Assembly: GCF_018977255.1 (NCBI RefSeq)
Contig: NW_024704793.1
Location: 186,001-250,000, forward strand
Source of the DNA: Callorhinchus milii
Lineage: Eukaryota
DNA: 64,000 nt
Reading direction: 5' to 3'
In this document: positions 39,126 to 59,879 of the stretch, piece after piece
Numbering within the stretch: the first letter of the stretch is position 1
How the letters are laid out: every line of letters starts with the position of its first letter
Notes under the pieces: model-generated
What the model saw: only the letters and a program-made list of their open reading frames with translations
Told to the model about the DNA's origin: nothing
The model's database searches: none
Translations under genes and position numbers: made by a program

Positions 39126-41754
39126 TTACTTAAGAAGTTTAAACATGTGTTTAAATGGATATATCACGAGATATTTTACATCCTCTCTGAATTTAGATTG
39201 TGACAAGGCATAAATGATGGTGTTTGTGCAGCAACTCAAGAGCTTAAGCATTTCGGTCACGTGGCGGACAACATATACTGGGTCTGTGTAATCTGTGTAG
39301 AAATAATTGTCTAAAGTTCGAGAAAGTATAAATTCTAAAACATACATCAGCCACAACAGGATGAAGCTGCCTGATATGGCGAAGAGTAAGATAATGGATC
39401 TCCTTCGATTCTCCATCTCTGGATCATTGCCACTTTCACTATTTTGGTTCAGGAGACTTCTGCGGATTCTGTTTGCCACTAAAATGTGTCTGACGGTCAC
39501 CACGTTCATCAGCAAAATCAGCAAGAAAGGAACAAATGGGGTTGTTATTGTTTCAAACCAGTGAAACACAATCCATGAGGGGGACGTGTGGTAAACTGTT
39601 TTGAACTTGCAATACCAAGGCACTTTTTTCACTATCTGTCTTGGCTCAAATATAAAGTACCAGGGAACAGCGATAAAACAGCTCAGAGAAGAAATCACTC
39701 CTACAACCACGGCTGCTGTCCTCTCGGTGCAATAACTGGTTTTCATTTTCACAAAACAGATGGCGACCATGCGATCAAATGTGAAAGCCACGGTGAACCA
39801 GACTGACATGTGGGTCACCGCTGTAATCAACAACATTCTGAGGGAACACAGGGGAGTGATGTCCAGAAATGTGTGAGGGAAATAAAGAGAATGGATTCGG
39901 TTGAAAATCACATCGTTGATGGCGACCAGGAAGTCACCCACTGCCATGGCCACCAGGTAGATGGTGATACATTTTGAGAGACCGCACTTTCCCCGGGACA
40001 GGACCACAATGGCCAACAGGTTCGCTGTAAAACAAAAGGAACATCAAACAGAAATATTTGCCAGTAAGCTGCGAAAGTTGATGAAATTTTGCTCGAACTG
40101 CTTTCACACAGCAGTTTCCCATGAACAACCACGGATTGAAGGGTCCAATTCTTTGACCATTTTATTCAACATATTCAAAATATTTTCAACGCTTTATTAA
40201 GCAATGCTTATCGAATCAAATCCAAGTATCTCGTTTGTCTGGCAAGGCCTCTAACCACTGAGCTACAGATATGATATAGCCATTGAACTACAGAGTAAAA
40301 AATACAAAGTTACATGTAAGATGTTAACCTTCATTCCGTGCCTGTTGCTGGTTCAGTTCGACATTATAGACCTCCTTTGACACTGCCAAGAAAGAGAAAG
40401 AACTTTCTCCAAGTTTCCTGACGAAGAATCCATCAAATTAAATTGGTAGCTCCATGTCTGTTGGCGGGACATTGCTTTGCCGTGTTTCGGCCACAAAATA
40501 AATTAAATCTCGACTTTACACTGTGAATCAGCGAATCAGTTTCAGACATCGCCATGATGTGAACGGTGCAACACGAAATGCAAGAATTATTATTTTTTAT
40601 CAACACGTTAAAACTTTAAGTCGGATACTGAAAAAAAGATCATTAAACTTCTCTCGTTAGAATTATATCACCCTGTTATAGGACCTGGGTCAAGTAAATG
40701 CATAGAATATAATTTGAAAGTTGTGGGTCATATTAATTTTAAATGTACGTTTCTTCAGATGCGATAATTACTCCGAATGTCAGCCTCCACTGATTTAGGA
40801 CGACCTTAAATATCACATTGTATTATTGTGAAAACAACAGACATCACCCACAACATAATTTAAAACGTCAAAATAAATGAAGGGATTTGAAGCACCAATA
40901 TTTGTCATCAAATTGCAAATAAACTCTATCATAATTATATGTTCCACGTAGCTATTGTATATTAAGAAAGACAGTTATGGCAATTCATGCGTTTATTAAA
41001 AGTAAGATATAATATATTTTAAAACAATTCAATCATAGCACTTATTGTCAGAGACCAACAATTTCGTGATTCTCCAATGGTTTTCTCCCTGGTCTCCCCC
41101 TCCATTCACAACAACCAACTGATTCAAAGCACTTCCACCATGTCCTTACTGCCACAATCTCCGGAATTCCACCACTCCAGTCCTCGCCAGGCTTCCCCTC
41201 CTCCTTTTCAGCAAACAAATCGCACCTGAAACACTGCAGCGATTGACAAGACCGCGGATGAGCGATCGGTGTGTTTGTTATCAGGATTGGACGCAGGCGG
41301 GCAATTTGGTAGAGGAGGGAAAAAATGGTTTCGTCATGGAAAGGACATGTGCTGGAAGGATCGCACTTGACTCCTCAGTTACTGATGGGTTTGGTGAGTC
41401 TGAGCGAGAGCTCCGGGAGGTTGGAAAGTTCCAACCCGCAGGAGGGAAGTGCGTTGACGGAGGCAAACTCTGTGGCTTCCGAATGCCGACATTCGGCGAC
41501 TGATAGTTTGCACTGATCCAAGCCTTGATATCCCTCAAAACATTGACAGGACATTAGCGGGCCAGGAGTCGAAGCTGGAGTCCGAAACCTAGAGTCGTAT
41601 GCCATTCAAAAATACGTGATACAACGGGGTATAAGTACAAGTGTAATTAATTACCAGTAATCCCAACAGTTGCCAACAGTGGATAGTAAACTAATATTGT
41701 CTGAAAAATTGTGGGCCAAAAGTGCAGTGGATAATCGCCTAAAGCTCGCAACAT
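39126..41754 (-). CDS. GPR139/GPR142-like class A orphan GPCR copy 2, intact, 332 aa (exons 41754-41655, 40024-39126)
   Basis: Exon 1 MLRALGDYPLHFWPTIFQTILVYYPLLATVGIT|gtaatt (gaccATG) in phase 1 to ttacag|CG AAC; FTFDRMVAIC, NTIIYALSQ; 999 nt in frame; TATAAA at 41831-41826. Confidence 0.92.
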
Positions 41755-43733
41755 GGTCTACGAACAGATTGGAGGCTGCCAGTGCTGGAAAGAGCATATC
41801 AGACTCACACTCAAAATTGCCAGCCTTTATATCCCAGAAGTTTCTCCACTGATTTGTGCAAATGACTGTAAGTAACATTAGTGTTCAGTTTCTGGCACGA
41901 ACTGCTGACTCGATTCCTTGGTGTTGGTAAGCAGGATCTCTTGGGGCTGAGCTAAATTTAAGCTGAAGTGTTCAGCAACAACAAGCTGGAATGCAATCAA
42001 ACCTGCGCAGTGGTCAGTGTCTGTGTCTGAGTTGTGCAGGTTGCTGGATGCCCTTAGTGCCTGTTTGAAGCTTGCAGCCTGTTGTTTCGAAGCTATGTCA
42101 CATTTATTGCTAAGTTATGCTGCTCACCATGAATGTGGTTGAGAGCGTAGGGTATCTGCTCTCCACCCAATGAGGGCTCAAAGGGTTTCTTTGATGCCAC
42201 ACCACAAACATCCAAGTCACTGCTGGTGTCATAATTGATCAAGTGAGTTCATCAGCCCACCTCTCACGAGGGTAGATGTTCTTCCTATCTTGTGTCTCTT
42301 TTCAATCCAACAATAAATATTATTTATGAGTTGGGTATTACTTGCTGGACAATCAGCAGGAAGCTTGCCAGATGTTCCTCTCAATGGCAAGCTTGCGGTT
42401 CTAAACTGGTTGAAGTCCAGCCGAGCTCAATCACACAACGTGTTTTGGTTCCTCTGCTAATAGGTATACTCGTTTGTCAGAGAAATGTCCAACCAAACAA
42501 CAGGTGATCCCCATGTAACAGTCACTAAAGTGGACCTCATCCCTGATGCTGCTCTTGTGCATCTTCTCTGCATCTATTCCAATGCCATATTGTTCCCTAT
42601 TATGAGGAAGTGCAAATCGATCATGTGGCTTCAGTTTCAATTTAATCAATGATAAAACACCTGCGCCATTCTCAGTTGACTTTGGTGCTGTATGGTTTTA
42701 AATATATAAATTTCAACACTGTCATGTTTCCCGCAAACACTTTGGACACCCAATATTGGGAAACAACTGCTCGCTGCCGCTTTCAGTTGATCAGTTGCTG
42801 CTCGTTACCAACTCATTTTGCTCCTCTGCGCCTCGCAGAATAATGTCCTTCAGTATATATTGCCCTTCCCTCTTCTTTTCTTGCGAGCTATTGGGATTAT
42901 TCCAGTGATCACCACCATATTGAGTTTCAATATGGACCATGTATTTTCCACTCATGAAACGGATATAGAATTGTAATGAAGGCACGACTGCCAATGCAAA
43001 AGCACAACGCATTTTACTGTCACATTGCAGCTTTACATATCATGCAATCATCATCTTAAATCAGGTATAACAGCAATTGACCCGCATTGCAAACTGCCAT
43101 GAAGTAGCCGTCACAAACTCGATGGGCAGAATATCCTCCTTTTTCGCTGTACAATTCTATGATTCTGTGAAACTAATTCCACAGATTTTCGAAGCGGATT
43201 TATCGTATCAGAAATTCCACAGTTACAGTCATTCGCTGACATAAACATCGAACTTCCAATAATCTTTTCATTTTATTTAGCGCCTTGAGAAGTGTTGAGT
43301 GAATGAGGGAGCGACATAAAGGGAATTTGTTGTCGTTGTGAACCCGCCCACCTATCACCACTTATATTTATACAACGAGGGGAATATTAAATACCTCTCA
43401 ACACAAAAATCATGTTCACTTATGTTAACAGAGTCAGTAAATCTTTAACAAATTCCGGGTTGAAATGTTGCAGTAAACCTGGGCTGCCAAATTTTCAAGA
43501 TATTTTGTGGATGGGTTTGTGCGGGTGTGAGGAGGGAACGAGGGTGTGGTTGGGGTGGAAATGAACTTGATGGGGTTTCCCAAACCCGGAAAAAAACAGT
43601 TTGAAAAATAAAGGACTGAATGCCAAGGGGAAGGGGAGAAATTCACAAACTGAAGTACCACTGTGAAACACTGATAGAAACCATTTGCGATAAGAAGGCT
43701 TGTGCAGCACAGGCAGAGTATATGAAGCTCTTA

Positions 43734-43844
43734 TTAGGTATTCTGAAGATCTGCGTAGAGAACGTTTTGACTGTCATTCCATGTTCTTGGTGGTGCTTGG
43801 CTCAAAGCGTTCAGGTTAATCGAAGCGTAAACAAGGGGAATGTC
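43734..43844 (-). CDS. Terminal exon with two ITIMs
   Basis: ctctgaacag|DIPLVYASINLNALSQAPPRTWNDSQNVLYADLQNT*; LVYASI and VLYADL match (I/V/L/S)xYxx(L/V/I). Confidence 0.85.
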   Translation of the reverse strand, partial: DIPLVYASINLNALSQAPPRTWNDSQNVLYADLQNT

Positions 43845-44147
43845 CTGTTCAGAGATCAAACGTAATAATAATGTAACTTCCATACCACATAGAGGCCTGA
43901 CAATAATCGCTCCCCCAAAAAAATCAATGTATTATTCATTTTCAATTGTTTGCGGGACACTGTTGTGCGCAATTGGCTGCCGCGTTTCGCTTAGAAATAT
44001 ACGGATATTTCACTTTACAGCATATGCTGTGATGCACTTTGAGACTTCTACAAGACGTGAAAAGCGCTATATCAAATGCAAGGATTATTATTATTGACCC
44101 TATCCCGTCTGGTTCATGACTCGTCTGTGTTGGAGATCACACGATTG

Positions 44148-44179
<32 letters not shown>

Positions 44180-44184
44180 ACCTC

Positions 44185-44425
44185 ATCTATATAGAGGTGT
44201 CACGGTTAGGACAATAATATGTCGGAGTTTCAATGTTAATAGCACACGATATAGATGTGCAAAAGTTAATATCAGAATAGGTGTGATTGTTAATACAGGT
44301 CGATATTGGTGGTGCCACTGAAATATCGCACTATATAGAGATGTTACTGTTAATAAAGCGCGATACAGATGTGTCACTTTTAATATCAGAAGATACCGAT
44401 GTGTCACCGTTAATACCAGACTGTA
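44185..44425. repeat. About 30-bp degenerate minisatellite
   Basis: Repeated atatagatgtgtcac.gttaata. Confidence 0.65.
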
Positions 44426-44919
44426 TAATAATAGTCCTTGCATTCGATGCAGTGCTAGACCACAGCGATTAGCAGAATATATTGTAACATGTAATGGCTG
44501 TGTATTTTGGGGGCAGCCAAATGTTCACAGCAGTGTTTCCCAAACATTCGTGGATTGAGTAACCAAATTATTATTATCTATTCTTGGAATTATTACACTG
44601 CGAAGGAAATGCTCCATGCAAATAACAACCTACTTGCTGCTGGGAAAGTTTTCCAACATCAGCAACTTTAATTTATATGCTAACCTTCACGTAGGGTAGC
44701 AAGCCAGAACAAGTGACAGTGGTAGATAAGAGGGAGGTTACCGTAAACATGGTCAAAGAGAAAGTTGTTCTGGTGTAATCTGAAGAATGGGATGGATGGG
44801 ATAAGGATGGTGATTTGAGGGAATGTTTTGGTGGGAGAAATGGAGCGCGTTATTGTGGTACAAACAGAAGCCCGGAAATAGTTAATAGGAAGCAGCTAGT
44901 AATGGATTGGAGAGAATAA

Positions 44920-45560
44920 AGGTGTGAAATGGAGACGGATTGAGAATTGGGTGAGTCAGGAGTTGGATTGCGGTTTAGGGCGGAGATGGGCAGATAATTG
45001 GGTGAGTCAGTGAATGGTTTGATGTGTGAGAGGGAGATGGATAGAGATATGGGGCATTCAGGGGTTTGATTAATATGTCAGATGGAGATTTGTGAAGGTA
45101 TTGTGGAGACAGGGATGTATAGAGACTTGGGGTGTCAGGGAAATATTTAGGTCAAATGTGAGATAGATAGGTACTTGGGGGACTCAGGGAAGGATGTGGC
45201 TCTAAATGTAAGATAGATAGATACTTCCGGGAGTCAGGGAAGGATTTAGGTCTAAATGGGAGAAGGAGAGAAGTGTGGGTGTCAGGTAAGGATTTCGGTC
45301 TTAATGGAGATACCGAAATACTTGGGGGTTCAGGGAAGGAGCTACCTCTAAATGGAAGATAGAGAGATACTTAGGGATTCAGGGGATAGACTGTGGTGTG
45401 AAAGGGAAATGGATGGAGGCTTGGAATGGCGGTGTGAAAGGATGGATTGAGGTGTCAGTTGGAGATGGGTAGAGACTTGGGGGTATCAGGGAATGGATTT
45501 AATTAAGTAAGATTGGAGAAATACGGAGATGTCCGAGATGAATGGATTTGAAACACGTGT
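44920..45560. repeat. Inverted (GA-rich) block of the same about 50-bp minisatellite
   Basis: gggagatggatagagatatgggg and ggagatgggtagagacttggggg are the reverse complement of the 47-55 kb monomer. Confidence 0.8.
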
Positions 45561-45574
45561 GAAGATCTTCAAAC

Positions 45575-46475
45575 CGTTGATTCCATGTGTGTCAGACACT
45601 CGGCTGATCACGGTGACGCGTTACAGTGTGTTTCGGTGTGTCAGACACCCGGCTGTACAGATTGACAGGATTCCGTGTGTGTCAGACACCTGGCTGATCA
45701 AAGTGAATCATTATTATGGTGTATGTCAGATAACCAGCTGATCAGGGTGATGTGTTTCCGTGTGTGTGTGCGTGTGTCAGATCCGGTTGATTACAGTTGT
45801 AGGTAAGAAACAGTGGCGCCTATCGAGCATTGGTGTGATGTGCAGTACGGGGATTGGTTTGTGATAGGGAGCAATTGGAGCCTTCGGAGGATTGATATGA
45901 TGGGGAAGCAGAGTTTAGTGCACATGATGTGGAGCCAGTGGAGCCTGGCGTGGACTGCTCAGAAGGGGTTTTAGAGTGTAGAGTGTGAAAGGCAGCCAGT
46001 GGAGATCTGCGTGGTCTGGTATGAAGGGGTACGGTGTGTAGTGTTTATAATAGGGCGCCAGCGGAGCCCAGTGAGTTCTGCGGTGATGGGAGTTCAGTGC
46101 GGGAGATTGTGAAGTGGTTGGAGGAATGTGTGAAGAGGATTTTATGGATGGCAGTGCTGATGAGACCAGCGAGGAGGATACTGGAATTTGGAAGTGTCTC
46201 AATGATCTTACCGGACTGTTACCCTGTCCGGATGAGCTGTCAGCGCCGCCTGTCAACAAAATAGATATATGGTGCATTAGTCAATGGGAATCCATCTTCT
46301 GAAACATTCCGCTGCTCAATTTTCAATAGCGTCAAAATTTGGGCGTTATTTTCCACTGTGTGTGTGTCAGAAACCCGATTGATAACAGTGACGGGTTTCG
46401 CTGTGTGTCAGTTACCTTGATGATCATGGTAACGGGTTTCAGTGTTTGCGTGTGTGCGTATGTGTGCACGTGTGT

Positions 46476-46506
<31 letters not shown>

Positions 46507-46605
46507 AGACATTGTCTGCGTAAGACCCATGGCTGATTGAAGTCATAGGTTTCCGTGTGTGTCAGACACCCAGCTAATCGTAGTGACTGGTATGCGTAGG
46601 TCAGA
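45575..46605. repeat. About 40-bp minisatellite (ccgtgtgtgtcagacacccggctgatc...) in two blocks either side of an old L2-like fragment and the cytoplasmic exon
   Basis: Repeated gtgtcagacacc(c/t)ggctga at 45575-45795 and 46345-46605. Confidence 0.7.
46212..46249 (-). CDS. Short cytoplasmic exon of the IgSF receptor
   Basis: Branch point tgactaat, acceptor ttttgttgacag|, GGADSSSGQGNSP, donor |gtaaga; 38 nt converts phase 1 to phase 0 as the model requires. Confidence 0.75.
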
Positions 46606-46635
46606 CAACGAGAGGAAAAAAAAATACACAGATAC

Positions 46636-46740
46636 CTTGTTTCTTGAATACCACGAAGTAAAGGACGGTAGACAATGTTGTGATCAATAGAATACAGCCG
46701 ATTATCACTGGTAAAATTATCTTCATCTGTGTGGGTTTTT
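46636..46740 (-). CDS. Transmembrane exon of the IgSF receptor
   Basis: EKPTQMKIILPVIIGCILLITTLSTVLYFVVFKKQ, 105 nt, donor AAG|gtatct; uncharged TM followed by KK; the acceptor (ttttttgggag) is atypical. Confidence 0.8.
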
Positions 46741-47129
46741 CTCCCAAAAAAATATTAATTATAATCATTGCATTTGATATAGCGGCTCATCACGTCTTCG
46801 AGAACTTTCATTGTACTTCATAACATATACGTAAAGTTAGTCAATGTTTATTTAGTGGTTGTAACTTAGGAGCCAATTGCGAAAACCAGTGTTTCACAAC
46901 CAGTCGTGCTTTGAGTGAATATAGTAGTTCTAAAAAATATATATTTGAAGAGATTGTTATCCTCGGAAACCGATCTGTCAATCGACCAACCGGGTTACTT
47001 ACTGCTAGGTAAAGAGAGGCGTGCGAAGACAGAAAACTTGCCTCCGGTTTATCCCTGCCCGGAAAACAAACGCAGGTCCTCTCACTTGTGTAATATTACG
47101 CTTTTGTACTTCACAGAGTGTTATCAGAG

Positions 47130-50100
47130 ATGACACACAAACAGGCATACACACACGCAGACACAAGCAAAAACGCACACTTACACTCAAACACACACAC
47201 AAATACACAATTACTCGCTTACACACGCAAGCCCCTCCCGCCCCACACAGATCCATACACAAACACTTTCACACTCATACTTGCATATACGCAGACACAC
47301 TGAATCCTCAACAGCTCAAGCCGTCTCACTCTCACATCTCAATTAATCTCCTGACTCCCCTGAAATCTCTGTCCATCTCCTTTTCGCAATTCTATTAAAC
47401 CCCTGACTCCGCAACGTGTCCATCCATCTCCTTCTACTACCTCAATCATTCACTGAAAGCATACGTCTCTATCCATTTCCCTCTTGCTATTCAGTCTATA
47501 AATTATGTTTTTTATTAATACATTAACGCCTAATTCTGTGGATATTCCCTTTGTAGTTGGATGAGTGGTTGTGATATCCACAAGTATTAAATTGAAAAGT
47601 TTTCCAATCGTTGATCACAGCACTATGCTCCAAATCAATGGATAGGCTCCTTGTTCTCCACTGCTAACTAAATCTCAATCTGCAACGTCTCACAACTCAA
47701 GCCGTCTCCTCATTCCTCAAGACTGTATCCATCTTCCTCTCACACATTCGTTCATCTCCTGATACACTCACATGTCTATCCATAGCCTTCTCGCAACTGA
47801 ATCCACCCCCAGACAACCCCAGTTCTCTATCCATCTCCCTCTTGCAACTTAATACATTCCCTGACTTCCAAGAATCAATCAGTCTCCCCCATGATCTTCA
47901 ATCTATTAAGTAGTACCATTAATCTTAATAATGCATCATTATTCTTAATAATTATATCGTTATTCAGTATCAGTATTCTTAATAATGATATCTGGCCTCT
48001 TGAGTCTTAGCTCATTCGTTTTGTCTTTGGAGGAAACGTTGAGTTATCTAAAAAATAAATTGAAAGCTTGTTGAATTCCAGTCACCTCAATGGATTCCCC
48101 ATCTCCTCAAGTCTCTATTTGTCTTCTTCTCCCACCTGACTCCATGCCATGACTCCCCTAAAATGCTATCGATCGTCTTCTTCCACTTCAATCAATCACC
48201 TGGCTCCTCCAATCCTCTAGCCATCTCCCATGTACACGTTTATCCTTCCACTGAAACACCAACATCTCACTCCAATCTCCCACTCTTACGTGAATCCATC
48301 ACCTGGATCCTCGAAATCTCTATCCGTCTCCCTCTTACACTTCAATTCATACCCTGATTTCTGCAAGTCTCTATCCACCTCCATATCGCAAATGAATCAA
48401 TCCCCTGGGTCCTCAACGTATATATTCAACTCCCTCTTGTACCTCAAACATCCCCCGCTAACACAGGGCTCTATCCATATTCCTCCTGTACATCAATCTA
48501 TCCATTATTGGCAATAGTATCTACCTAGTTATTCTATGTTCATACAGGTTGTATTTTGGTGAATAGTTGAGATAGCTAAAAACATTTTTTAAAGATTTAA
48601 CATTAGTTCAACAGTTGATAATCGCAGGATGCTCTAACAAAATGGATAAGCCTCGCTGCTCTCCCCTGCTAAGGCAGTCTCAATCGGAAACCTCTCCAAA
48701 CTCAATTGATCCACTACATCCTCAATGCACTGTCCATTTCCCACTCACAACTCAATCCGTCCCCTAATTCCCCCACGTCTCTATCCATCTCCCACTCACA
48801 CCTCATTCAATCTTGACTTCACCATGTCTCTATCCATCTACCTATCAAACGGTAATCGATCCTTGACTCCCAAGTCAATTCACGTGTCTCGAGCACCGCA
48901 ATCCACCCGACGACTCACCGAAGTCTCAGTTATTCTCCATCTTGCAACGCAAACCATCCTCTGACTTCCTCAAATTTTTATCCATCTCCACCTTGCACTT
49001 CAGTTCGTACGCTGACTTCCACAAGCTATACTCACATACATCTCGCAAAACAATCAAACGCTTGAATCCCCTAAGCGTCTATTAATCTCCGTCTTGTATT
49101 TCAGACGCCGCATGAACACACAAGTATCTATCCATCTCACTCTTGCACATCAAACTATTATCTATTTTTATTATCTTACGTTTTGAACCTATGCTCATCC
49201 AGTTTGTTGATCGGGGAATGTTTGAGGTCGCCAAGTATGTTTTTATTGAAAAGAAATGACTCACAAACAGACATACAAAACAAACAGACACACCGCACAG
49301 ACACACTCTTGCACATTCTCACACACACGAACACACACTTACACGCGCAAGCCCCCCCACCACACAGCGACATTCGCACTCACACTTACATAGTCACACA
49401 CACTACTCACCAGCTCAAGCCATATCCCTCTCACAACTCAACTGATCTCCTGACTCCCCCAAATCTCGATCCATCTGCTTCTCTCAACTCAATCAAACCC
49501 CTGACTCCCCCATCTCTCTACCCGTCTCCCTATTGTAACTCAATCATTCATTGAAAATACAACTCTCTATACATCTCCCTCTCGCACCTCAGTCTGTCAA
49601 TGTTTTTTATCATTAATACTATAAAATTTGATTCTGTGCTCATTCCCTTTTTTATTTAGGGGAACGGTTGAGTTAACCGACAGAATTAAATTGTCCAACC
49701 GTTGATCACAGCACGTCGCTCTAAAATAATGAATTAGGCTCTTTGTTTACCACTGCTAACTAACTTTCCGTCTTCAGCGTCTCACATCTCAAACCATCCC
49801 TTAACTCTTCAAGACTCTATCCATCTCCCTCTCACACATTCATTCATCCCCTGACATATCTTCATTTCCATCCATATCCTTCTCGCAACTCAATCTGTCC
49901 CCTGACATCCCCAAGTTTCTTTCCATCTCACTCTTACAACTTTACCCAACCTCTGACTCACCAACATCTCAATCCATTTCCCACTCATACGTCATACGCC
50001 TGATTCTCTAAATCCCTATCCATCTTCCTCTTCCAACTCAATTCATACCCTGACGTCAGCAAGTCTCTATCCACTTTCCTCTCGTAACTGAATCATTCCG

Positions 50101-53100
50101 GTGAGTCCGGCAAGCATCCATCCATCTCTCTAATGCACCTCAAACATCCACTGCTTACACAAGGCTCTAACCGTATTATACCTCTTTAATCTTTCAGTTA
50201 CTGATATCATGAATATCTTACCAACTGAGCCTGTGCACATACTTGTTTTTGGGGCATAGATGAGATAGCAACAAAAATTAAATCGAAACGTTGTTCAATA
50301 GTTGATCATCGCAGTACGTTCTAGAAAAAATGTATTAGCCTCGCTGCTCTCCCCTGCTAAGTCAATCTCAATCGGCAAACTCTCCCAGTTCAATAAATCC
50401 CAAAAATCCACAATTCGCTGTCCATTTTCCACTCGCAACTCAATCCATCGCCTAATTCCTCCACATCTCTATCCATCTCCCTCTCACACCTCAATCAATA
50501 CCCTAACTTCTGTATCCAGCGCCCTCTCACACGACAATCCATTCTCTGACTCCGAGAAATATATATTGTCCTCTCTCTAGCAACGCAATCCATCCGATGT
50601 CTCACCGAAGTATCAATTCATCTCCATCTTGCAACTTAAACCATCCACTGTCTCCATCAATTCGATATCCATCTCCCTCTTGCACTTGCATAACTCTATT
50701 TATATCAATCTCGCAAAATTGTCAATCGCCTGTCGCACTAAGCGTCTATCAATGTCCCTCTTTTATCTCAGTCGTCGCCTAACAACACAAGCCTCTATCC
50801 ACCTCCCTCCTGCATAACAACTGTTAAATATTTTTATTATTCATATTTCACTTTTTATGTTTGTGCTCATCCACGATGTAGATGGGTGAATGGTGGAAAT
50901 AGCTTAAAAAGCGTAAATTTTAAAGTTGTTCAAACGTTGATGAGAGCACGGGTCTCTGAAACAATGGAACAGTCTCGCGGCTCTCTACTGCTTACTCAAT
51001 CTCCATATGCAAACTCTCCCACTTAAATCCAGCCCCTAATTCCTCAAGTCTCTATCCATCTCCCTCTCACACTTCAACCCATCCCTTGATTCGAGTATTT
51101 CCTATCCATCTCCCACATGCACGTCAATCCATCCATGACTCTTCATATTTGCCTATCTATCTCCGTCATAAAAATGAATCCATCCACATGACTCCTCAAA
51201 TCTATATCTATCACCCCGTCACACCTATTCCATCGCAAAAGACCGTGAAATCTATATCCATCTCGCTATGGCACGTCAGTCAATCCCCTGACTCCACCAA
51301 ATCTCTGGTTATCGACTTCTCGCATTTTAATGCATCCCCTGACTCCCCCAGATGTCTATTTGTTTCCTTCTCGCACATTAATCTATCCTCTAACTCAATC
51401 TGGCTCTGTCCACCACTGTGTTGCAACTTCTTCCATGCCCAAGTGTCTGTCCATCTTCCTCTTTAACCTCATTCCATTCTCTGACTCACCCTTTTCTCTA
51501 TCCATATCCATATTGCACCTCAATAGATCCAGTAATTGAAAATCTATATCCATAATAATCTCACACTTTACTCCATCGCCTGACTGCACAACATTAAATC
51601 CACCTGCCCTCAATCAATCCGCTGACTCCTTACACCTCAAGCAATCCGCTGCCTCGCCCTCATGACTATCTATATCCCATTCGCAAGTTTATCCATCCCC
51701 TGATCCCTCAAATCTCTATCCATTGGTTTGTCGCAACTCAAACGATTTCCCGTATCCCCAAGTCTCTATCCATCTGCATCTTACACCTCCATTCATCCTC
51801 CGACACACTCACGTCTCTATCCATCTCCTTCTTGCACTTCAATCCATATCCTGAATTCTGCAAGTTTCTATCCATAACCATCATTAAAAATCACCTAACG
51901 CCATCCATCTTCCTCTTGTACCTCAATGCATTGTGTGACTGCAAAAATCTCCAGGAGTTCCCTTTTGCAACTGAATCTATTAATTATTGCCCTCATTAAT
52001 ATTTTACATATTGAGTCCGTACTCATATATTTGCAGGTGGGGGAATGCTTGCGATATCTAAAAAAAGTAAATTGAAATGTTGTAGAATCGTTATTCATAA
52101 CAAGATGATCGAAAACTATGGATGATCTCCACTGCTAACTCAATCTGAGTCTGCAGTCTCCCCCACCTCAATGGATCCCCTAACACTTCAATTCTCTATC
52201 CATCATCCTCTCACACCACAGTCTATCACCTGATCCCCCACATATCTATCCTTATCCCTGTCACCTCATCCATCTACTGACTTCCGCAAATCTTTGTCCA
52301 TCTCCATCTCACATGCCATGCCATCCCTTGACTTCCAAGAGTTTCTGTTTAACACTCCTTAACAGCTCAATACATTCAATGCTCTCCGAAGTCTCAATCT
52401 ATCTACCTCTTGACCATGAATCCACCCCCTGTCCCTCAAGTCTCTATCCATTTCCCTCTTGCACTTCAATCCACACACTGATTTCCACTATTCTCTGTCC
52501 ACCTACATCTAGAAACTCAATCATTCCGCTGACAAATCGAAATCTCCATCCATCTGCGTCGTGCAACTCAATTCGTTAAATAATGTTGTTCTTAATATCT
52601 TACCACTTGTGCCATTGCTCATCTCCTTTGAAGTTGGGAGTATGGTTGAGATAGCTAAAAAAAACAAAAATGCATATTTGTTCAATTCTCAATGATAGAA
52701 GGTGCTCTAAAACAATGGATCAGACTCCCTGCTCTCCACTGATTTCTCAATCTCAATCGGCAATCTCTCCCACCTCAATCGATCCCAAACTCGGCAAGTC
52801 TCTCTCCATCTCCCTCTCACACCTCAATGGATCCGCTAATTACCACGCATCTCTATCCAACTCCATCTCACCACTCAATCAATCTTCTGACATCCCCTCT
52901 TAATTATCGATCTCCCTCTAACACCACAGTCTCTCTTCTCACGCCCAAGTCTGCCTTTTAAGCTCTACCTACCACCACAATCAATCACATGGCTCCCGGA
53001 ATTATCAATCCATCTCCCACTTGCACACCAATCCATCCACTGTCACCATCTGCCAGCCACTTGTACGTCAGTGCATTCCCCGATTCCCCAAATTGGTTAT

Positions 53101-54960
53101 TCATTTCAGTCTTACACTTCAATCTATCCAATGACTCCTGAAATCATCTCCATCTCACACGTCAATCTATCACCTGACTCAACAAGTCAATTTTCATTTT
53201 CCTATTACATTTCCATCCATCTTCTCACTCCCCGAAATCTCTATCCAACTGATTATTGCAAGTCTATACTTCCCTCAATTCCCGAATCTGTATCCATCTA
53301 CAGATTTCATAACTTAATCTGTCACCTCATTCTAGAAAGCCTCTAGGTGCCACTTCCTCACACTCATTCCATTGCTTGGCTCCCCCAAGCCTTTATCCAA
53401 CTCCGCCTGCAGCTCAATCCATCCCGACACCACAAAGTATTTCTCTTCACCTGACACCTCAATAGTTGCCCTGACTGCCTAAGTCTCAATCCGTCTAACT
53501 CTGCACCACAGTAAGTCCCCTGACTCCCAGATGTTTCCAGCCATCTCTCACACCACAATCCTTGGGACAGCTTATATTCACTTCCCTCCAGCACCGCAAT
53601 CCATCCTTTGACTTGCCGAAGTCTTATTCCATTACCCTCTTGCACTTCAATCCATCCGCTGACTCCGGTAATTCTATATCTGTCTCCCTCTTGCCCTTGA
53701 ATCCATATCCAACTTCCGCAAATCTCTATCCACTTCCATCTCGAAACACAATCAATCCCCTGAATCCAGAAAGTAATTCCGCTGTCTCACCCAAATCTCT
53801 ATCCATCTCATTCGTGCACCGCAATCTATTAGTTAGTGTTATTGTTAATCGGTTACCTCTTGTTCCTTTGCTCGTCTCCTTTGAAGTTGAGTGTATGGTT
53901 GGCATAGCTAAAAAAAGAAAAATTGCACAGTGTTCAATTGTTAATGATTGCCGATGCTCCAAAAAGATGGAGCCTCTCTGCTCTCCACTGATAACTCAAT
54001 CTCAATCTGCAAGCTCTCCAATCTCAAACGATCCCCAAACTCCTAAACTCTATCCAGCTCCCTCTCACATCTCAATCGATCCCCTAATTTCCCGCAATCT
54101 CTATCCATCTCCATCTCGAAACAAAATTAATCCACTGAATCCTCTTAACAACTATCAATCTCCCTCTTTTACTTCAGACACCAGTTGAATGATCAAGTCT
54201 GCATCCGTCTCCGTCTTGCTCATCAATCCATTAGAACATTGTATTACCAATCTCTTATCTTTTGCGTCTGTGGTTATCCGTATTGTAGATGGGGAAATGG
54301 TTGAGGGAGCTAAAAAATTAAATTGAAAAGAAGTTCAGTCGTAGATAATAGCACAATGATCTGAAACAATGCATCAGCCAGCTGCTTTCCACAGCTTACT
54401 CAATCCCCATTTGCAACCTCATCCACTTCAATCTCGTTGGTAACTCTTCAAGTCTCTATCCATTTCCCAGTGGCACATCAATTCACCCACTGGTTCCCGC
54501 ACATTTCTGTCCATCTCTCTCTCACAGCCCAATCCATCCCTGAATCCAAAAAATTCTCTATCCATCTCCATCTTTCGCCTCAATCCATCCCTAAATTCCC
54601 ATGTTTATATCCATCTCTGTCTCACATCTTAGTACACCCACTGACTCTGAAAAGTCTCTACCCATTTCACTTTCACACATTCATCCATTCCCTCTCTCCC
54701 AAATATCTCATCCCATCTCCTGCTCACACCTTAATCAATCAACTGAGTCACCCAAAAGAACATCCACCTAACTCTTAAACTTCACGACTTTCCCATGAAC
54801 CTGCAAGACTCTATCCATCTCCCTCTCGCAGTTTATCGAAAATCCTCTGACTGGACATGGCTGTCCACCTCCCATTTACACTTCCATCTATCGCATGATT
54901 ACACATGTCTTCATTTGCATTTGTTCATCACTTAAGTACTCAAATTCTTTATCTATCTTC
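47130..54960. repeat. Composite minisatellite: about 50-bp CT-rich monomer arrays separating the stalk-exon modules
   Basis: Approximate consensus TCAATCCATCCCCTGACTCCCCAAGTCTCTATCCATCTCCCTCTCACACC; for example gtctctatccatct recurs at 51762 and 51813. Confidence 0.85.
47527..54309 (-). other. Array of 11 duplicated, mostly 51-nt, Ser/Thr/Pro-rich stalk exons (3 intact, 8 degenerate)
   Basis: Copies at 54309-54259, 53907-53857, 52654-52604, 52057-52008, 50902-50852, 50268-50222, 49676-49625, 49230-49180, 48575-48525, 48047-47997, 47577-47527; consensus tttttttag|CTATCTCAACCAT...ATGAGCACAGACTCAAGTG|gtaagata. Confidence 0.8.
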
Positions 54961-55567
54961 CTCTTCGGTTAGACGGACAGATAGAGAGAGAGAGACGGAC
55001 AGGCAGATGAGCAGTAGGAAGGACTGATGTGGAGATAGGTACTTACGAACAGGATGAGGCCATTTAGCCCATGGAGCCTGTTCCGCTATTCTATAAGTTT
55101 ATGTCTAAACTGTACGTAAACTAGAATTACCCATTCTTGCTCCTTTTCCTTTAATAATCTGAGCTAATAAACATCTATGCGCCTCCGTCTCGACAATGTA
55201 AATGGTTCCAGCCACAACAGACAGCATTTTGCGGTTGAGAGAGTGTTGCAGATATCCATTGCCCTTTATTTCAGTGGCAAAATGGCTGCAAGTTTCACCC
55301 GTAAATGACTCTGCGTTAATTTTAAGATAATGTCCCGTGTCCTGGATTCCCCCACATAGTAAAAAGCTTATAAGTAGCTACGTTATCGAACACTTTATAA
55401 TTTAAAAAAAACTTAATGCTGAAGAGAGAGAGATACAGACAGAAAGGGAGAAAGACCTAGAGACAAGTTGGAGAGAAGACAGATGGAGAAACAGATAGAG
55501 AGTGGGAAGAGAGAAAGGAGAAAAAGAAAATGATGGCAGGTGAACAGTTGAGTGTGATCACACTTAC

Positions 55568-55876
55568 CTGATCGAACCGTCACGTAAATTTCCTGGAAGG
55601 AATGGGTGAGACCTTTTATCTTGAAAGTATAACGATATGATCCAGAATCTTTGAGTTCAAGTTTGCTGATGTTTAAGCTTCTAAAATCCAGAGAGTGACG
55701 ACTGTCAGCGAAAATCAGATTGCCATCATGTGTCCACTGTACCTCAATTTCATCCGAACTAATTGTGCCGTCTCCATGAAATGTGGGTTTGGTGTTAAAA
55801 TAACCAGGGTGTGAGATTTGACATGTGAGAGCCAGCCGTCCACCTGCGGTCAGAGAGATCTCAGTAGACACAGACA
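55568..55876 (-). CDS. Second Ig domain exon (C2/I-type), F-strand Cys replaced by Tyr
   Basis: GGRLALTCQI...VQWTHDG...SLNISKLELKDSGSYRYTF...IYVTVRS; 309 nt, phase 1-1, ctgcag| and |gtaagt. Confidence 0.85.
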
Positions 55877-56289
55877 CTGCAGAGAGGCAGGAGAAAGAGT
55901 GGGGACAAACAGTTACTACTATTAACTGAAACATATTCCAACATGATTTACAGCAGGAACAGTCACCGTTTCTATCTGTATCTGGTCTGCCCAATTCACT
56001 GCACCATATGTGCCCTTCAGCGAGCGACAAAGAGACAAAGAGAAGGAAAAGGAGAGAGAGATAGAAAGAGAGAGCGAGAGATTGAGAGAGAGCAAGAGCG
56101 GGAGAGAATGCGAGAAAGAAGGAAAGAAAGAAAGATATGAAAAAAAGAAAGAAAGTAAGGAAGATAGATAGAGACACTGAGAAGGAGATGTAATGCGAGA
56201 GAGAATGGCTGAGAGAAAAGATTGAGACTGAGAATGAGAGAGCGAAATACACATGTCGAGAGATCAGTCAGGTCTGTGCAGTAACTTAC

Positions 56290-56644
56290 GGTGAAACACT
56301 ATCAGATGGACGATGCATGTATACGCAATTTTTTCTTCTTTTTTTATAAACAATGCACTGTTACTCGCCAGCCAGACTCATTGTGGGTGTGAGTAACAGG
56401 GAGAGATCCCCTGACTGGAAAGCGTTGGAATCAGCCACTGATATGTCCTTATCATGAGTGTCGTCACACGCAGAGCTGTCTTCAGTTATCTCACACAAGT
56501 TTAGTTCTTCCTTCCCTGAGATGGAGTACCAATACCATTTAGCGGATTTGTTTTCCCTCCCAGCGTCAGGTGAGCAAGGCAGTAAGGCAGAGCTGAAGCC
56601 GTTAGACACCACATAACTCTCGCTCTCATCACTTCTCATAGAGA
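56290..56644 (-). pseudogene. IgV-domain exon with a premature stop and a frameshift
   Basis: SALLPCSP...AKWYW...FQSGDLSLLLTPTMSLAGE*QCIV; TAA sits where Tyr of the GxYxC motif is expected; 355 nt, and removing one base from the A-run restores ...KIAYTCIVHLIVFH|gtaagt in phase 1. Confidence 0.85.
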
Positions 56645-57790
56645 CTGCACAGGAGATAAACGTGAGAGAGACTGAGAAACATTCCTCACCGAATAAACAG
56701 CACACAGCGCAAACTCAGCCCCTCGTGATCATTAGCACATTACACATTGTTTAATAATAATCATTGTTCGCATATTAACTGCAGCGATTTATTGCGTATT
56801 CGAGGCGTCACAAAGCACTTTACAGAATCTACTGTGGGTCGAATTAACTGTATGTTTTACTTCCGAAACATGGCAACAAATTACACACAACATTTTCCCA
56901 AGGAAAGTGACGGATTGTGTAACTGGTTCATTATGTATATGTAAAGCAATTCTTAACTACGGAAAATAGATACGCCCATCAATTAACAACTGTGTTCCTA
57001 CTGATTGGGAGGTAAACGCTGGTGCGTATAGTAAGGAAAGTTGCCCCACATTTAGCCCTTCCAGGTATTGAACCCAGAAATCTCACTTGTGAGGCGAGTG
57101 CTCAAAAAGCTGAGCAACAGGTCTCCACATAGTGTTGTGATAAGCAGCACATCACAGAGAGGGAAGGAGCGTGAGAGGAAGGAGCAACACAAAAGTTAGG
57201 GATAGAGTGAGGGAGATAAATGAGGGAGATTTAGGGATCGAGAGGGAGTGGAAGAGAAAGAGAGGGAGAGGGAGATGAAAAGGGAAAGAAGTGAACCAAT
57301 GTGAGACGGGAAAAGAGGCATCGATGCAGGAAATAGTGAAGAGGTAAAACAAGGGGAGTTGAAGGGAAGGAAGAGCGAGGAAAGCGTGAGGGAGAAAAAG
57401 AGGCGAGAGACACATAGAGGGAGAGTGACAGAGAAGGAGAGATAAATAAAGATGACGGAGAAGGAAAGAGAGCTTCCCCTTCTACAGACCTTCGATCACC
57501 CTCCAGCCCTCACTGCCCTCCACCCCTCATGATCCCGTTCTGCAGCTCGGGTACAAACCGCTCACTGTTGAACAATAACAACTTGCATTTACATTGCTCC
57601 CCTCACTCAGGGCAACGTCCCAGAGCAGGTAACAGCTTGAAATGTTCTCCCAAAGTGAAAGTCACTGTGTAAATTCAGTCGGTGGTTGTGGCTGGTGGCT
57701 GTTTGTGGGAGACAGGAGTCAGTCCTCTGATATCCTATGTAACAGTAAGTGCCATGGTTGGTCTGATCAGCAGCCTGATGGTGAGACACC

Positions 57791-57791
<1 letters not shown>

Positions 57792-57821
<30 letters not shown>

Positions 57822-58113
57822 ATGCATTTGATATAGCGCTTTTCACGTCGGGAGGACGTCCCAAAGCGCTTCACAGAATATACTGTGAAGTGAATTGACT
57901 CTATATTTGTGGGCGAACGCGGCAGCCAATTGCGCACAGCAATGTCCCACAAACAGTCGTTGATTGAAAATGACCAATTTATTATGGTTTTTGGTTTTGG
58001 AAGGATTATCATTAGGCTCTGTGTGGAGTAAGGAAACTTGCCCAAGGTTTGGCCCTCTGCCTGGAATTGAACTCAGGTCTCTCCATTGCAAAGCGAGTGC
58101 TCTAACCACTGAG
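57792..58113 (-). mobile_element. Same SINE family, well preserved, (ATT)n tail
   Basis: Colinear with 16032-16345; further copies at 13735-14040(+), 27078-27455(+), 43875-44095(+), 56740-57126(-), 59280-59535(-). Confidence 0.85.
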
Positions 58114-58382
58114 CGAGTGCCCTCCTCTCCTCTCTCCTCTTCTCACTCAAAGCCAAATCAGCAAGTACAAAGGAGACTGCAATCATCATAGCTGATGCTA
58201 ACTTTCGCACAGAGACTTTCACGACTCAAAGTGGTTCAGAAGGTCCACAGTGAAGTTTGTTGACTGCGTTTTATGGCGCAACGCGGCAGATAATTGCATA
58301 GAGCGACATTCCCGCAAACAGCCGTGAAATGAACTGCGATTGAAACCTTTCAGCCAGGACACCGAGAAAGAAGGAGAGATAG

Positions 58383-58432
<50 letters not shown>

Positions 58433-58542
58433 GAGGGAGAGAGAAAGAAAGTACCTTCTCTTTACCTGACACAACATACAGCACAAGTTAGTCCATGGGG
58501 TGAAAGGCAGAGATAGGAGAGCTCAGGAGTGTGGACACGTAC

Positions 58543-58636
58543 CTGAAGTCAGGAGACAGAGAGGCAGGAACATCCAGCAGAATGATATGACGGAGTGACT
58601 GAGCTCAGCTCTGGGCACGACACGGCCTCTGTCCAT
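58543..58636 (-). CDS. Signal-peptide exon of the IgSF receptor
   Basis: MDRGRVVPRAELSHSVISFCWMFLPLCLLTS, ends CAG|gtacgt in phase 1; acceptor (ct)n-cag before 58713. Confidence 0.75.
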
Positions 58637-59879
58637 CCCAAATCCTGACCCACGCTATTACTGTATCTCTCAGCCACATAGACAGGGGGCACTCCCCAAG
58701 CCAGAGAGTGTCACTGAGAGAGAGAGAGAGAGAGAGCGACAGAGAGAGACAGGGAGAGTCAGCGAGAGAGACTGAGAGACAGCGAGAGAGGTAGTCAACG
58801 AGATAGATGGAGAGACAGAACCAGAGCCGAGCACTGGTCAACACCGCTCACACCACAAAATACCACGAACATCTCAGTGCTGTGACCTGAACACATTCAG
58901 TGACAAAGGCGGGACATGAAAAAAAAACATTTCATAATGATGCATCTGTCACTTTCCTGTTGCAAAATGACCTGCTGTTTTTCTCATCATTCACATGTTG
59001 TGTCCTTGAGTCTCTATCGAACTCCCGCTCACAGCTCAATCCGTTTTCTCACTCCCCGCGTCTCTGTCCGTATCTCTCTCGCACTTGAATCCAACCCCTT
59101 GTGCCTCAGGACAAAACACTCAAATGACAGGCAAAGAACGCGAAAGGGCAGCAAATGAATCCTGAAGGGGAAAAAACAGCAGAAACAGCAGCCAATTATG
59201 CAACAGGAAAGTTGCAAAAAACACGTTGTGAAATGGTGTATTTTATGTTTTCTGATTGGTCACACAGACGTGTTATAAACCTTGCATTTGATATGGGGCT
59301 TTTCACGTCGGGAGGACGTCCCAACGCACTTCACAGAATACACTGTAAAGTGATTTGACTGTATGTTTGTGGGCGAACGCGGCAGCCAATTGCGCACAGC
59401 AATGTCCCACAAACAGTCGTAGATTGAAAATGTTGTTTTTTTGGGGGGGTTTTGGAGGGATTATTATTAGGCTCTGTGTGGAGTAAGGAAACGTACCCAA
59501 GGTTTCGCCCTGACCTGCCGGGGATTGAACTCAGTCTCTCGCTTCAGGCCACAACCCGGAGAATCTTCTCATTTCCTGGTCTGAGCGATTTTAGTCAGTG
59601 CTGTGCACTCTATCGCGCTCTCTCTTTCCATATTTATCGTTGTATCTTCCTGTCTCTCTGTGCCTTTCGCTGAATCTCTCTCTCTGTATCTCTTTGTCCC
59701 CCTTCTGTTTCTCTCTATCTCCTTCTCTCTCTCTCTGTGCCTCTCTATTTGTCTTCCTCAGTGCGTCTCTGTCTCGATCTCTCTCGGTATGTCTGTCTCC
59801 GTTTGTCTCTCTCTGTTGGTCTGCAGGGGTGGGAGTGTGGGATTGGTGGGGGGAAACGCCTTGTATCAGGCACATGGGT

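What the first reader, a model, noticed from the sequence alone, without database searches (positions are those of the whole stretch)
43734..58636. Hidden Ig-Ig-mucin-TM-double-ITIM inhibitory receptor gene
The leader, TM and ITIM exons do not appear in the ORF track. All exons splice in consistent phase into a type I receptor with tail KKQGGADSSSGQGNSPDIPLVYASINLNALSQAPPRTWNDSQNVLYADLQNT. Two ITIMs with tyrosines 24 residues apart fit tandem-SH2 phosphatase (SHP-1/2) recruitment, and the TM has no charged residue. I do not recognise V-C2 plus a multi-exon mucin stalk plus two ITIMs as a named family, so this may be an undescribed checkpoint or paired-receptor family.
Basis: partly seen in the sequence, partly recalled or inferred. 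Interest (0 to 1): 0.85.

Follow-up and report, generated by a model that had tools for sequence, protein, structure and literature searches.

The report
Shark-lineage inhibitory Ig receptor, broken copy
This is a real, transcribed gene for a two-Ig-domain surface receptor with an inhibitory (ITIM) tail from an unnamed family of sharks and chimaeras, but the copy in this assembly carries a stop codon and a frameshift, so it is one more lineage-specific immune receptor, not a new kind of system.

Summary
That tail has two ITIMs with tyrosines 24 residues apart, and the TM is uncharged.

One claim fails. Ig1 is 355 nt, not a multiple of 3, and has an in-frame TAA at the conserved Tyr. So the phases fit only after repair.

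An RNA-like contig (X8, about 97% identical) is spliced Ig1-Ig2-stalk at the predicted GT..AG sites. X8 and a DNA run (X1) read TAT instead of TAA. Their A-tract is one base longer, which still breaks the frame.

Relatives exist in Callorhinchus milii (two ITIM-less paralogues) and in three sharks. Some shark proteins combine homologous Ig1, Ig2, TM and an alignable ITIM tail. All are "uncharacterized" models, and my searches found no paper on them.

The nearest solved relative by profile is LAG-3, but the family's WxC and tail motifs are absent.

Verdict: a real member of an unnamed chondrichthyan inhibitory IgSF family, disabled in this haplotype. The scan read this stretch before (s1-903992) and has met other ITIM receptor families in this genome. 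I never joined the exons; every search was exon by exon.

The parts
58543..58636 (-). Leader exon (ATG at 58636; hydrophobic core VISFCWMFLPLCLLTS; phase-1 donor cag|gtacgt)
   Evidence: Sequence. 65.5% identical over 29 aa to the leader region of paralogue P0001 (tblastn). I did not see its use in a transcript of this locus: the X8 contig that lies here has 10 differences in 95 nt and is probably a paralogue's.
56290..56644 (-). Ig1 (V-type) exon, 355 nt. In-frame TAA at 56363-56361 at the Tyr of YxC. The A-rich tract 56345-56329 is 17 nt, and 19 nt would keep the frame.
   Evidence: 58% identical to P0001 and 55-56% to P0002, which scores V-set at 29.1 bits against a cutoff of 26. Exon ends are confirmed by the X8 spliced contig. 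X1 and X8 read 56361 T>A (giving TAT) and one extra base behind 56328.
55568..55876 (-). Ig2 (C2/I-type) exon, 309 nt, phase 1-1. The F-strand Cys is replaced by Tyr (SGSYRYTF), which is a family trait.
   Evidence: Pfam I-set E 2.6e-5, 24.6 bits against a cutoff of 23.7. 100% identical to P0023, 66% to P0001, 59% to P0024, 34-43% to shark members. Y-x-Y is seen in all family members except P0024. The X8 joint 55876|56290 has ends CT..AC.
54259..54309 (-). Stalk exon copy 1 (51 nt): open frame, AG acceptor, donor AT in this assembly
   Evidence: X1 reads 54258 T>C, which gives a GT donor. X1 also reads 54280 G>A and 54273 G>C, which give the W and S found in P0023's first stalk exon.
53857..53907 (-). 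Stalk exon copy 2 (51 nt; MPTIHSTSKETSKGTR), intact AG/GT
   Evidence: X8 joint 55568 to 53907, ends CT..AC. Present in P0023.
52604..52654 (-). Stalk exon copy 3 (51 nt; ISTILPTSKEMSNGTS), intact AG/GT
   Evidence: Present in P0023. It lies just outside the stretch given to read laying.
47527..52057 (-). Eight further copies of the 51-nt stalk unit (52057, 50902, 50268, 49676, 49230, 48575, 48047, 47577). The copy 50902-50852 is open with a weak donor. The other seven have lost the acceptor, the donor or the frame.
   Evidence: nhmmer with a profile of four copies, then hmmalign; alignment A1.
46636..46740 (-). Transmembrane exon (KPTQMK-IILPVIIGCILLITTLSTVLYFVVF-KKQ), phase 1-1, no charged residue in the membrane span
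   Evidence: 100% identical to P0023.
46212..46249 (-). Cytoplasmic exon 1 (G-GADSSSGQGNSP), phase 1 to phase 0
   Evidence: Present in P0023. The similar GADSSPGQ occurs in paralogue P0024.
43734..43844 (-). Cytoplasmic exon 2 with two ITIMs (LVYASI, VLYADL) and stop TAA
   Evidence: It aligns with the C-terminal ends of shark P0017 (41% over 29 aa), P0006 and P0018. I did not test whether it is transcribed.

Best explanation
The stretch holds a real, transcribed locus of an unnamed chondrichthyan family of type I receptors. The build is: leader, V-type Ig, C2/I-type Ig without the F-strand cysteine, a Ser/Thr-rich stalk made of 17-residue (51-nt) exons, an uncharged TM, and a tail with two ITIMs.

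In C. milii the stalk exon has been copied 11 times, and most copies have decayed. The haplotype in this assembly is disabled by a nonsense codon and a frameshift in Ig1, plus a lost donor at the first stalk exon. Other haplotypes lack the nonsense codon.

An intact allele would most likely work like other ITIM receptors; this mechanism is inferred and was not shown here. The V domain binds a ligand. Src-family kinases phosphorylate the two tail tyrosines. The tandem SH2 domains of SHP-1/SHP-2 dock on them and dampen nearby activating receptors.
For: - Splice sites and phases.
- Transcript: the 1070-nt X8 contig is laid as 56644-56290 | 55876-55568 | 53907-53857, with CT..AC intron ends on the plus strand (GT..AG on the gene strand). 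It has 10 of 355 and 9 of 309 differing letters.
- Homologues of the Ig1 piece among 1.84 billion representatives: 6 hits at E<=0.001, 5 of them family members from C. milii, Pristiophorus, Heptranchias and Heterodontus.
- Alignment A2 shows shared motifs in Ig1, Ig2 and the tail.
- P0017 differs from P0006 by a 17-residue insert at the stalk position.
- Lesions: TAA and the 355-nt length.
- X1 and X8, 2 of the 2 runs that cover the place, read TAT. X1 reads a GT donor at 54258.
- X5 (DNA) is identical to the window over 55485-55985, including position 55827 where X1 and X8 differ. So the window's haplotype occurs in independent reads.
Against: - The A-tract has three lengths in three sources: 17 nt in the window, 18 nt in X1 and X8, and 19 nt implied by P0023. 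Only 19 keeps the frame. So either homopolymer calls are unreliable and a working allele exists, or the gene is frameshifted in every haplotype seen.
- X8 differs from the window by about 3% in exons, while X1 differs by about 1% in introns. X8 could therefore come from a very recent paralogue, not an allele.
- I saw no transcript evidence for TM to cyt1 to cyt2 in C. milii. The old model P0023 skips the ITIM exon.
- X8 is labelled RNA only as a guess.
- There are no functional data of any kind.
Confidence: 0.62

Rival explanations
1. The gene is intact and functional in the species. On this reading the stop and the frameshift in the window are assembly or consensus errors.
For: X1 and X8 read TAT at the stop position, and their A-tract is longer. 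P0023 implies an in-frame 19-nt tract. The locus is transcribed and correctly spliced. Homopolymer length is the classic weak point of assemblies (established knowledge).
Against: The TAA and the AT donor are substitutions, not homopolymer indels. X5 reads match the window's haplotype where they cover it. X1 and X8, from two separate studies, both give 18 nt, which is still out of frame. Three degenerative differences sit on one haplotype.
Confidence: 0.2
2. The family is a two-domain (V-C2) member or sister of the CD4/LAG-3 family.
For: The profile of alignment A3 against PDB sequences puts LAG-3 first (8dgg_A E 2e-10; 9cyl_L 33.2 bits, E 2.3e-7 over profile positions 34-175, spanning D1 into D2). 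In the AF2 model the two domains together superpose best on CD4 D1D2 (Z 13.6, rmsd 3.4, 174 aligned) and LAG-3 (Z 13.0). The model has one long strand, 126-141, running from Ig1 into Ig2.
Against: The WxC motif in strand F of the C2 domain, which Takizawa et al. 2023 call the most supportive family motif (PMC10768021, passages read), is Y-x-Y here. There is no Cx(C/H) in the tail, and the last motif is YADLQ, not (F/Y)xxL(D/E). The model is poor (mean pLDDT 54). Ig1 alone matches CAR, nectin and CD226 equally well (Z 14.2-14.9). FCRL5 scores nearly as high as LAG-3. The neighbours in the window are an NLR and two GPCR ORFs.
Confidence: 0.1
3. The exons are a chance assembly of ORF fragments and motifs, not a gene.
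For: ITIM pairs occur by chance: there are 11 stop-free pairs in the six-frame translation of the window. The window's Ig1 piece has no Pfam match of its own.
Against: A spliced contig joins Ig1, Ig2 and a stalk exon. Homologues are collinear from leader to tail. P0023 is 100% identical over Ig2 and the TM exon and 94-95% by tblastn over two stalk exons.
Confidence: 0.02

Closest known systems
ITIM-bearing IgSF inhibitory receptors in general (for example CEACAM1-L, CD33-type Siglecs, PECAM-1, SIRP-alpha, LAIR-1; examples recalled, not tested here)
   Same: Type I topology, N-terminal Ig domains, an uncharged TM, and two (S/I/V/L)xYxx(I/V/L) motifs about 24 residues apart near the C-terminus. 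ITIM-less paralogues exist in the same species. Predicted ITIM-plus, ITIM-minus and TM-less isoforms exist in Heterodontus.
   Different: None of these families appears among the top profile matches. The Ig2 domain lacks the F-strand cysteine. The stalk is built from repeated 51-nt exons. Phosphatase recruitment is untested.
CD4/LAG-3 family
   Same: Best PDB profile match, running across the D1-D2 junction. The two-domain geometry of the low-confidence model is CD4-like. Ig1 is a single exon, and shark CD4 and LAG-3 also have no intron in D1 (PMC10768021, passage read).
   Different: Two domains instead of four. No WxC in C2 strand F. No Cx(C/H) or (F/Y)xxL(D/E) tail motif. Two canonical ITIMs. 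No synteny evidence.
JAM/CTX-type V-C2 adhesion molecules (CAR, JAM, JAML)
   Same: One shark member, P0018, is automatically named 'junctional adhesion molecule C-like'. CAR D1 is the top structural match for Ig1 (Z 14.9, rmsd 2.3, 110 aligned). JAM-A is a weak single-sequence match (E 0.03).
   Different: The Z scores are tied with nectin, CD226 and CD200R. With both domains the rmsd to CAR is 11.4. The tail carries ITIMs. That JAMs end in a PDZ-binding motif is recalled, not tested.
Lamprey NICIP (two Ig domains, TM, ITIMs)
   Same: Similar architecture according to the abstract start in the search listing (PMC5071834).
   Different: I saw only the listing and made no sequence comparison. 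It is an analogue at best.

Membership tests
ITIM-bearing IgSF inhibitory receptor (functional class) | Type I membrane protein: signal peptide, ectodomain, single TM without a charged residue | tested here: met
   Leader and TM exon sequences. No predictor was run; I judged hydrophobicity by eye.
ITIM-bearing IgSF inhibitory receptor (functional class) | At least one Ig-superfamily ectodomain | tested here: met
   Ig2 scores I-set at 24.6 bits against a cutoff of 23.7. The Ig1 piece has no Pfam match of its own, but it is 55-56% identical to P0002, which scores V-set at 29.1 bits against a cutoff of 26.
ITIM-bearing IgSF inhibitory receptor (functional class) | Cytoplasmic (S/I/V/L)xYxx(I/V/L) motif(s) | tested here: met
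   LVYASI and VLYADL, with tyrosines 24 residues apart. In the sharks the last motif fits in P0006, P0017 and P0003 but not P0018. The first fits only in P0018.
ITIM-bearing IgSF inhibitory receptor (functional class) | Uninterrupted reading frame | tested here: not met
   TAA at 56363-56361 and a 355-nt Ig1 exon in this assembly. Other runs read TAT, but their 18-nt tract is still out of frame.
ITIM-bearing IgSF inhibitory receptor (functional class) | Phosphotyrosine-dependent recruitment of SHP-1, SHP-2 or SHIP | not testable with these tools
   Needs biochemistry.
CD4/LAG-3 | [quoted passage not shown] | tested here: not met
   The window has SYRYTF and the sharks have RYTYT at that position.
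CD4/LAG-3 | Tail motif Cx(C/H) (CD4) or (F/Y)xxL(D/E) (LAG-3) (PMC10768021) | tested here: not met
   The tail has no cysteine. The last motif is YADLQ in the window and YAEIK in the sharks.
CD4/LAG-3 | Overall ectodomain sequence similarity, with CD4 or LAG-3 as top matches | tested here: inconclusive
   LAG-3 is the top PDB profile match (E 2e-10; best single stretch 2.3e-7), but FCRL5 scores 7.1e-10 and many Ig proteins follow. No reciprocal search was possible.
CD4/LAG-3 | Location in the conserved LAG-3/CD4 genomic region | tested here: inconclusive
   The window shows a NACHT ORF and two 7tm_1 ORFs as neighbours.
JAM/CTX | V-C2 ectodomain with specific similarity to JAM or CAR | tested here: inconclusive
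   CAR D1 has the top Z for Ig1, but it is tied with nectin and CD226. The JAM-C-like name is automatic.

The most novel reading that the evidence does not exclude
The family could be a surviving single-unit (V-C2) relative of the lineage that gave rise to CD4 and LAG-3, kept only in cartilaginous fish and carrying true ITIMs. That would show what a pre-duplication CD4/LAG-3-type receptor with an inhibitory tail looked like. In C. milii it would sit in a polymorphic cluster with null alleles and ITIM-less partners.
Probability: 0.1. Interest if true: 0.7.

Novelty: new member of a known kind. Interest (0 to 1): 0.4.

Why it matters
Cartilaginous fish are the oldest living lineage with antibody- and T-cell-based immunity, and their non-rearranging regulatory receptors are barely described. 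This locus adds an unnamed V-C2-stalk-ITIM family shared by chimaeras and sharks.

It shows three features typical of fast-evolving immune receptor clusters:
- ITIM-less paralogues in the same species
- haplotypes that differ by inactivating changes
- a stalk exon copied 11 times, with most copies decaying

Its weak but repeated resemblance to LAG-3/CD4 gives a testable lead on the origin of that family. For annotation, it shows that the existing model of this locus is a chimera with the neighbouring GPCR gene and misses the ITIM exon.

Tried and rejected
- Pfam on the four exon translations: only Ig2 matched.
- PDB sequence search with single exons: nothing specific.
- ESM Atlas with Ig2 and with the P0006 ectodomain: only generic V-set and I-set immune clusters such as IL1RAP, CD200R, TACTILE, TIGIT and PD-1.
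- tblastn of the exon translations against the window: no paralogue inside the window. The only weak Ig-like match was at 14201-14413 on the plus strand, E 0.058, and I did not follow it up.
- Word-indexed protein searches with P0006, alignment A3 and P0001 added only P0017-P0019, P0023 and P0024, plus three marginal teleost hits at E 1e-4 to 9e-4.
- CEACAM: I considered it because of the tail pattern and rejected it. No CEACAM appears among the 60 best profile matches. The two CEACAM papers only mention cartilaginous fish in passing (passages read).
- Siglec: only CD22 d6-d7 at E 0.026.
- Mucin scan: a simple S/T/P-rich ORF scan missed the stalk exons. A splice-aware scan found three, and nhmmer found all 11 copies.
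- I could not see the supplementary files of PMC10768021 (sequence lists, BLAST top matches). They were closed and I did not ask for them. They might list related shark molecules.

Full report
ANATOMY. The gene lies on the minus strand. Reading the sequence and checking every border by script gives these exons:
- leader 58636-58543 (ATG...TCA G|gtacgt, phase 1)
- Ig1 56644-56290
- Ig2 55876-55568 (309 nt, phase 1-1)
- TM 46740-46636 (105 nt, phase 1-1)
- cyt1 46249-46212 (38 nt, phase 1 to 0)
- cyt2 43844-43734 (phase 0, stop TAA)

LVYASI and VLYADL both fit the ITIM consensus. The two tyrosines are 24 residues apart, and the membrane span has no charged residue. Those parts of the observation are correct.

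THE STALK. Between Ig2 and the TM exon lie 11 copies of a 51-nt unit, each with similar flanks. nhmmer with a profile of four copies gave E values from 3e-36 to 8e-9 (alignment). In this assembly 2 of the 11 have an AG acceptor, an open phase-1 frame and a good GT donor: 53907-53857 and 52654-52604. One more (50902-50852) is open with a weak gtgaaa donor. One (54309-54259) is open but has AT at the donor. Seven have lost a splice site or the frame.

The usable copies encode 17-residue segments that are about half Ser, Thr or Pro, with NxS/T sites. So a glycosylated stalk is plausible but short.

THE FLAW IN THE OBSERVATION. Ig1 is 355 nt, which is not a multiple of 3. It also has an in-frame TAA at 56363-56361, where the Tyr of the YxC motif belongs...SLAGE*QC. 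Downstream of the A-rich tract 56345-56329 the Ig-like G strand (EKIAYTCIVHLIVFH) and the phase-1 donor lie in another frame. That frame is the ancestral one, because paralogues P0001 and P0002 end Ig1 with ...IIHLIVFH and ...IVHLTVFN. So the exons do not all splice in consistent phase as the assembly stands.

By contrast, the missing F-strand cysteine of Ig2 (SGSYRYTF) is not a lesion. Y-x-Y is shared by P0001 and all shark members, and the sharks have a new cysteine further on.

TRANSCRIPT AND HAPLOTYPES.

Run X8, labelled RNA as a guess, holds a 1070-nt contig. It is laid as 56644-56290 (contig positions 53-408; 10 differing letters, 1 gap), then 55876-55568 (409-717; 9 differing letters), then a joint to 53907-53857. 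The skipped parts have ends CT..AC on the plus strand, which is GT..AG on the gene strand. So Ig1, Ig2 and a stalk exon are joined exactly where predicted, in a sequence about 97% identical to the window.

Run X1 covers the introns as well, at about 0.5-1% difference in most pieces, so it is DNA of the same locus.

At 56361, X1 and X8 read A instead of T. These are 2 of the 2 runs that cover the place; X5 and X7 do not cover it. On the gene strand this gives TAT, which is Tyr. Both runs also have one extra base behind 56328, which makes the A-tract 18 nt. X1 reads C at 54258, which gives stalk copy 1 a GT donor. X5 (DNA) is identical to the window over 55485-55985, including 55827, where X1 and X8 differ.

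So there are at least two haplotypes. The window's haplotype carries three degenerative states: TAA, the shortest tract and the AT donor.

THE OLDER GENE MODEL. The 392-aa protein P0023 is an older model of this same locus. By blastp it is 100% identical over Ig2 and the TM exon, and by tblastn 94-95% over stalk copies 2 and 3 and cyt1. Its first stalk exon carries the W and S that X1's variants encode. It reads CIVYKKKKKKIAYTC..., which implies a 19-nt, in-frame tract.

Three sources therefore give 17, 18 and 19 nt. I cannot tell whether a working allele exists. P0023 starts two codons after the position of the stop, misses the ITIM exon, and runs on into the GPCR ORF at 40016-39126. It is a chimera.

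FAMILY. The Ig1 piece before the stop was searched against 1.84 billion representative proteins. Six scored E<=0.001, and five of them are relatives:
- P0001: C. milii XP_007882626, 58% identical
- P0002: C. milii A0A4W3GJ61, 56%
- P0003: Pristiophorus japonicus, 35%
- P0005: Heptranchias perlo, 30%
- P0006: Heterodontus francisci, 32%

The sixth hit is an unrelated repeat protein. Further searches added P0017-P0019, P0023 and P0024.

Alignment A2 shows shared motifs in Ig1 (SNGSSxVLLPCS ... LCxI ... C ... GNYSL ... YxC) and in Ig2 (LTC ... W ... FDFRSLNI ... GRYTYT). The shark tails (...NYAAINLYALGK...ILYAEIKTN-end) align with the window's cyt2 exon (VYASINLNALSQ...VLYADLQNT-end). Against P0017 this is 41% identity over 29 residues, at the C-terminus in each case.

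These shark proteins are automatic gene models; I saw no cDNA. P0017 has a 17-residue insert at the stalk position relative to P0006. Heterodontus models also include ITIM-less and TM-less isoforms.

The two C. milii paralogues lack ITIMs. P0001 has a short tail. P0024 has one stalk segment, an Arg at the start of its membrane span, and a tail with no tyrosine beyond the juxtamembrane KRRY and no ITIM. That fits a paired-receptor cluster but does not prove one.

CLOSEST KNOWN. A profile of nine family members against PDB sequences ranks LAG-3 first. 8dgg_A scores E 2e-10. 9cyl_L gives a single stretch of 33.2 bits, E 2.3e-7, from the start of D1 into D2. FCRL5 is next at 7.1e-10, summed over many weak repeats.

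An AlphaFold2 model of P0006 is poor (mean pLDDT 54; Ig1 62-84). With it, Foldseek lists CAR, LAG-3 D1-2 and CD4 D1D2. VIA-align shows Ig1 alone tied among CAR, nectin-1, CD226 and JAML (Z 14.2-14.9). Both domains together fit CD4 D1D2 best (Z 13.6, rmsd 3.4, 174 of 177 residues aligned), then LAG-3 (Z 13.0).

Against membership, I read passages and section 3.1 of Takizawa et al. 2023 (PMC10768021). They name the WxC motif in strand F of the C2 domains and the tail motifs Cx(C/H) or (F/Y)xxL(D/E) as the family's marks. None of these is present here. I therefore file the family as an unnamed IgSF family with a distant, unproven resemblance to CD4/LAG-3.

LITERATURE. Five searches bear on this:
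- the LOC and accession ids: 0 papers
- cartilaginous fish + ITIM + IgSF + inhibitory receptor: 8 papers, none on this family judging by titles and abstract starts
- Callorhinchus milii + ITIM: 1 unrelated paper
- elephant shark, inhibitory receptor, Ig-like, multigene family (at least three of the four terms): 91 papers, 15 listed, none on this family
- the CD4/LAG-3 search

Subscription journals and supplementary files were not searchable.

MECHANISM. Shown: the exon structure, splicing of Ig1-Ig2-stalk, family membership, the motifs and the lesions. Inferred from general knowledge of ITIM receptors: ligand binding by the V domain, tyrosine phosphorylation and SHP-1/2 docking. Not shown: use of the ITIM exon in C. 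milii, any ligand, the expressing cell type, or whether any allele is intact.

VERDICT. This is a real locus of a real but unnamed chondrichthyan inhibitory-type Ig receptor family, disabled in this haplotype. It is a new member of a well-known kind. It is of moderate interest because of the stalk-exon accordion, the haplotype differences and the LAG-3/CD4 lead.

Noticed in passing
window 3690-5501 (+), and 14556-14885 (+): A 603-aa ORF with NACHT (E 2.8e-37), NOD2_WH and NLRC4_HD2 domains, so an NLR gene. The later ORF reads like leucine-rich repeats but had no Pfam match.
   Followed up: partly
window 23421-24317 (-) and 39126-40016 (-): Two intronless rhodopsin-type GPCR ORFs (7tm_1, E about 1e-21 each). 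Where P0023 covers them, they are about 59% identical to each other.
   Followed up: partly
window 39705-46744 (-), protein P0023: An older gene model fuses the receptor (end of Ig1 through cyt1) to an exon at 41560-41378 and to the GPCR ORF, and skips the ITIM exon. It is probably an annotation chimera.
   Followed up: partly
window 57725-58122 (intron between leader and Ig1). Similar ORF text recurs at about 43950-44100 and 59200-59500.: A very high-copy repeat, with summed contig depth above 2 million in X1 and many joints and loose ends. It looks like a SINE-type element.
   Followed up: no
window 48000-54000, and 45121-45384: The stalk introns have a strong strand bias (GC skew about -0.5 on the plus strand). 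They also hold degenerate repeats of about 48-51 nt (TRF periods 48 and 51), which give long S/P/T-rich ORFs on the opposite strand.
   Followed up: no
window 18700-22100 (-): Several long ORFs that look like a retrotransposon, for example 19503-19883 with a YADDTQL-type motif. Observed only.
   Followed up: no
window 14201-14413 (+): A weak Ig-like tblastn match to the Ig2 exon (28% over 79 aa, E 0.058). It could be chance.
   Followed up: no
proteins P0010-P0016 (Heterodontus francisci models): The predicted isoforms of the shark homologue include forms with the ITIM tail, with another short tail, without a tail and without a TM.
   Followed up: partly
window 58542-58636, X8 contig (record 31): A 381-nt RNA-like contig matches the leader exon with 10 differences in 95 nt and is unlike the window on both sides. 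It is probably the leader of a close paralogue or a divergent allele.
   Followed up: no
window 12861-13092: A run of 232 N. I left it alone.
   Followed up: no
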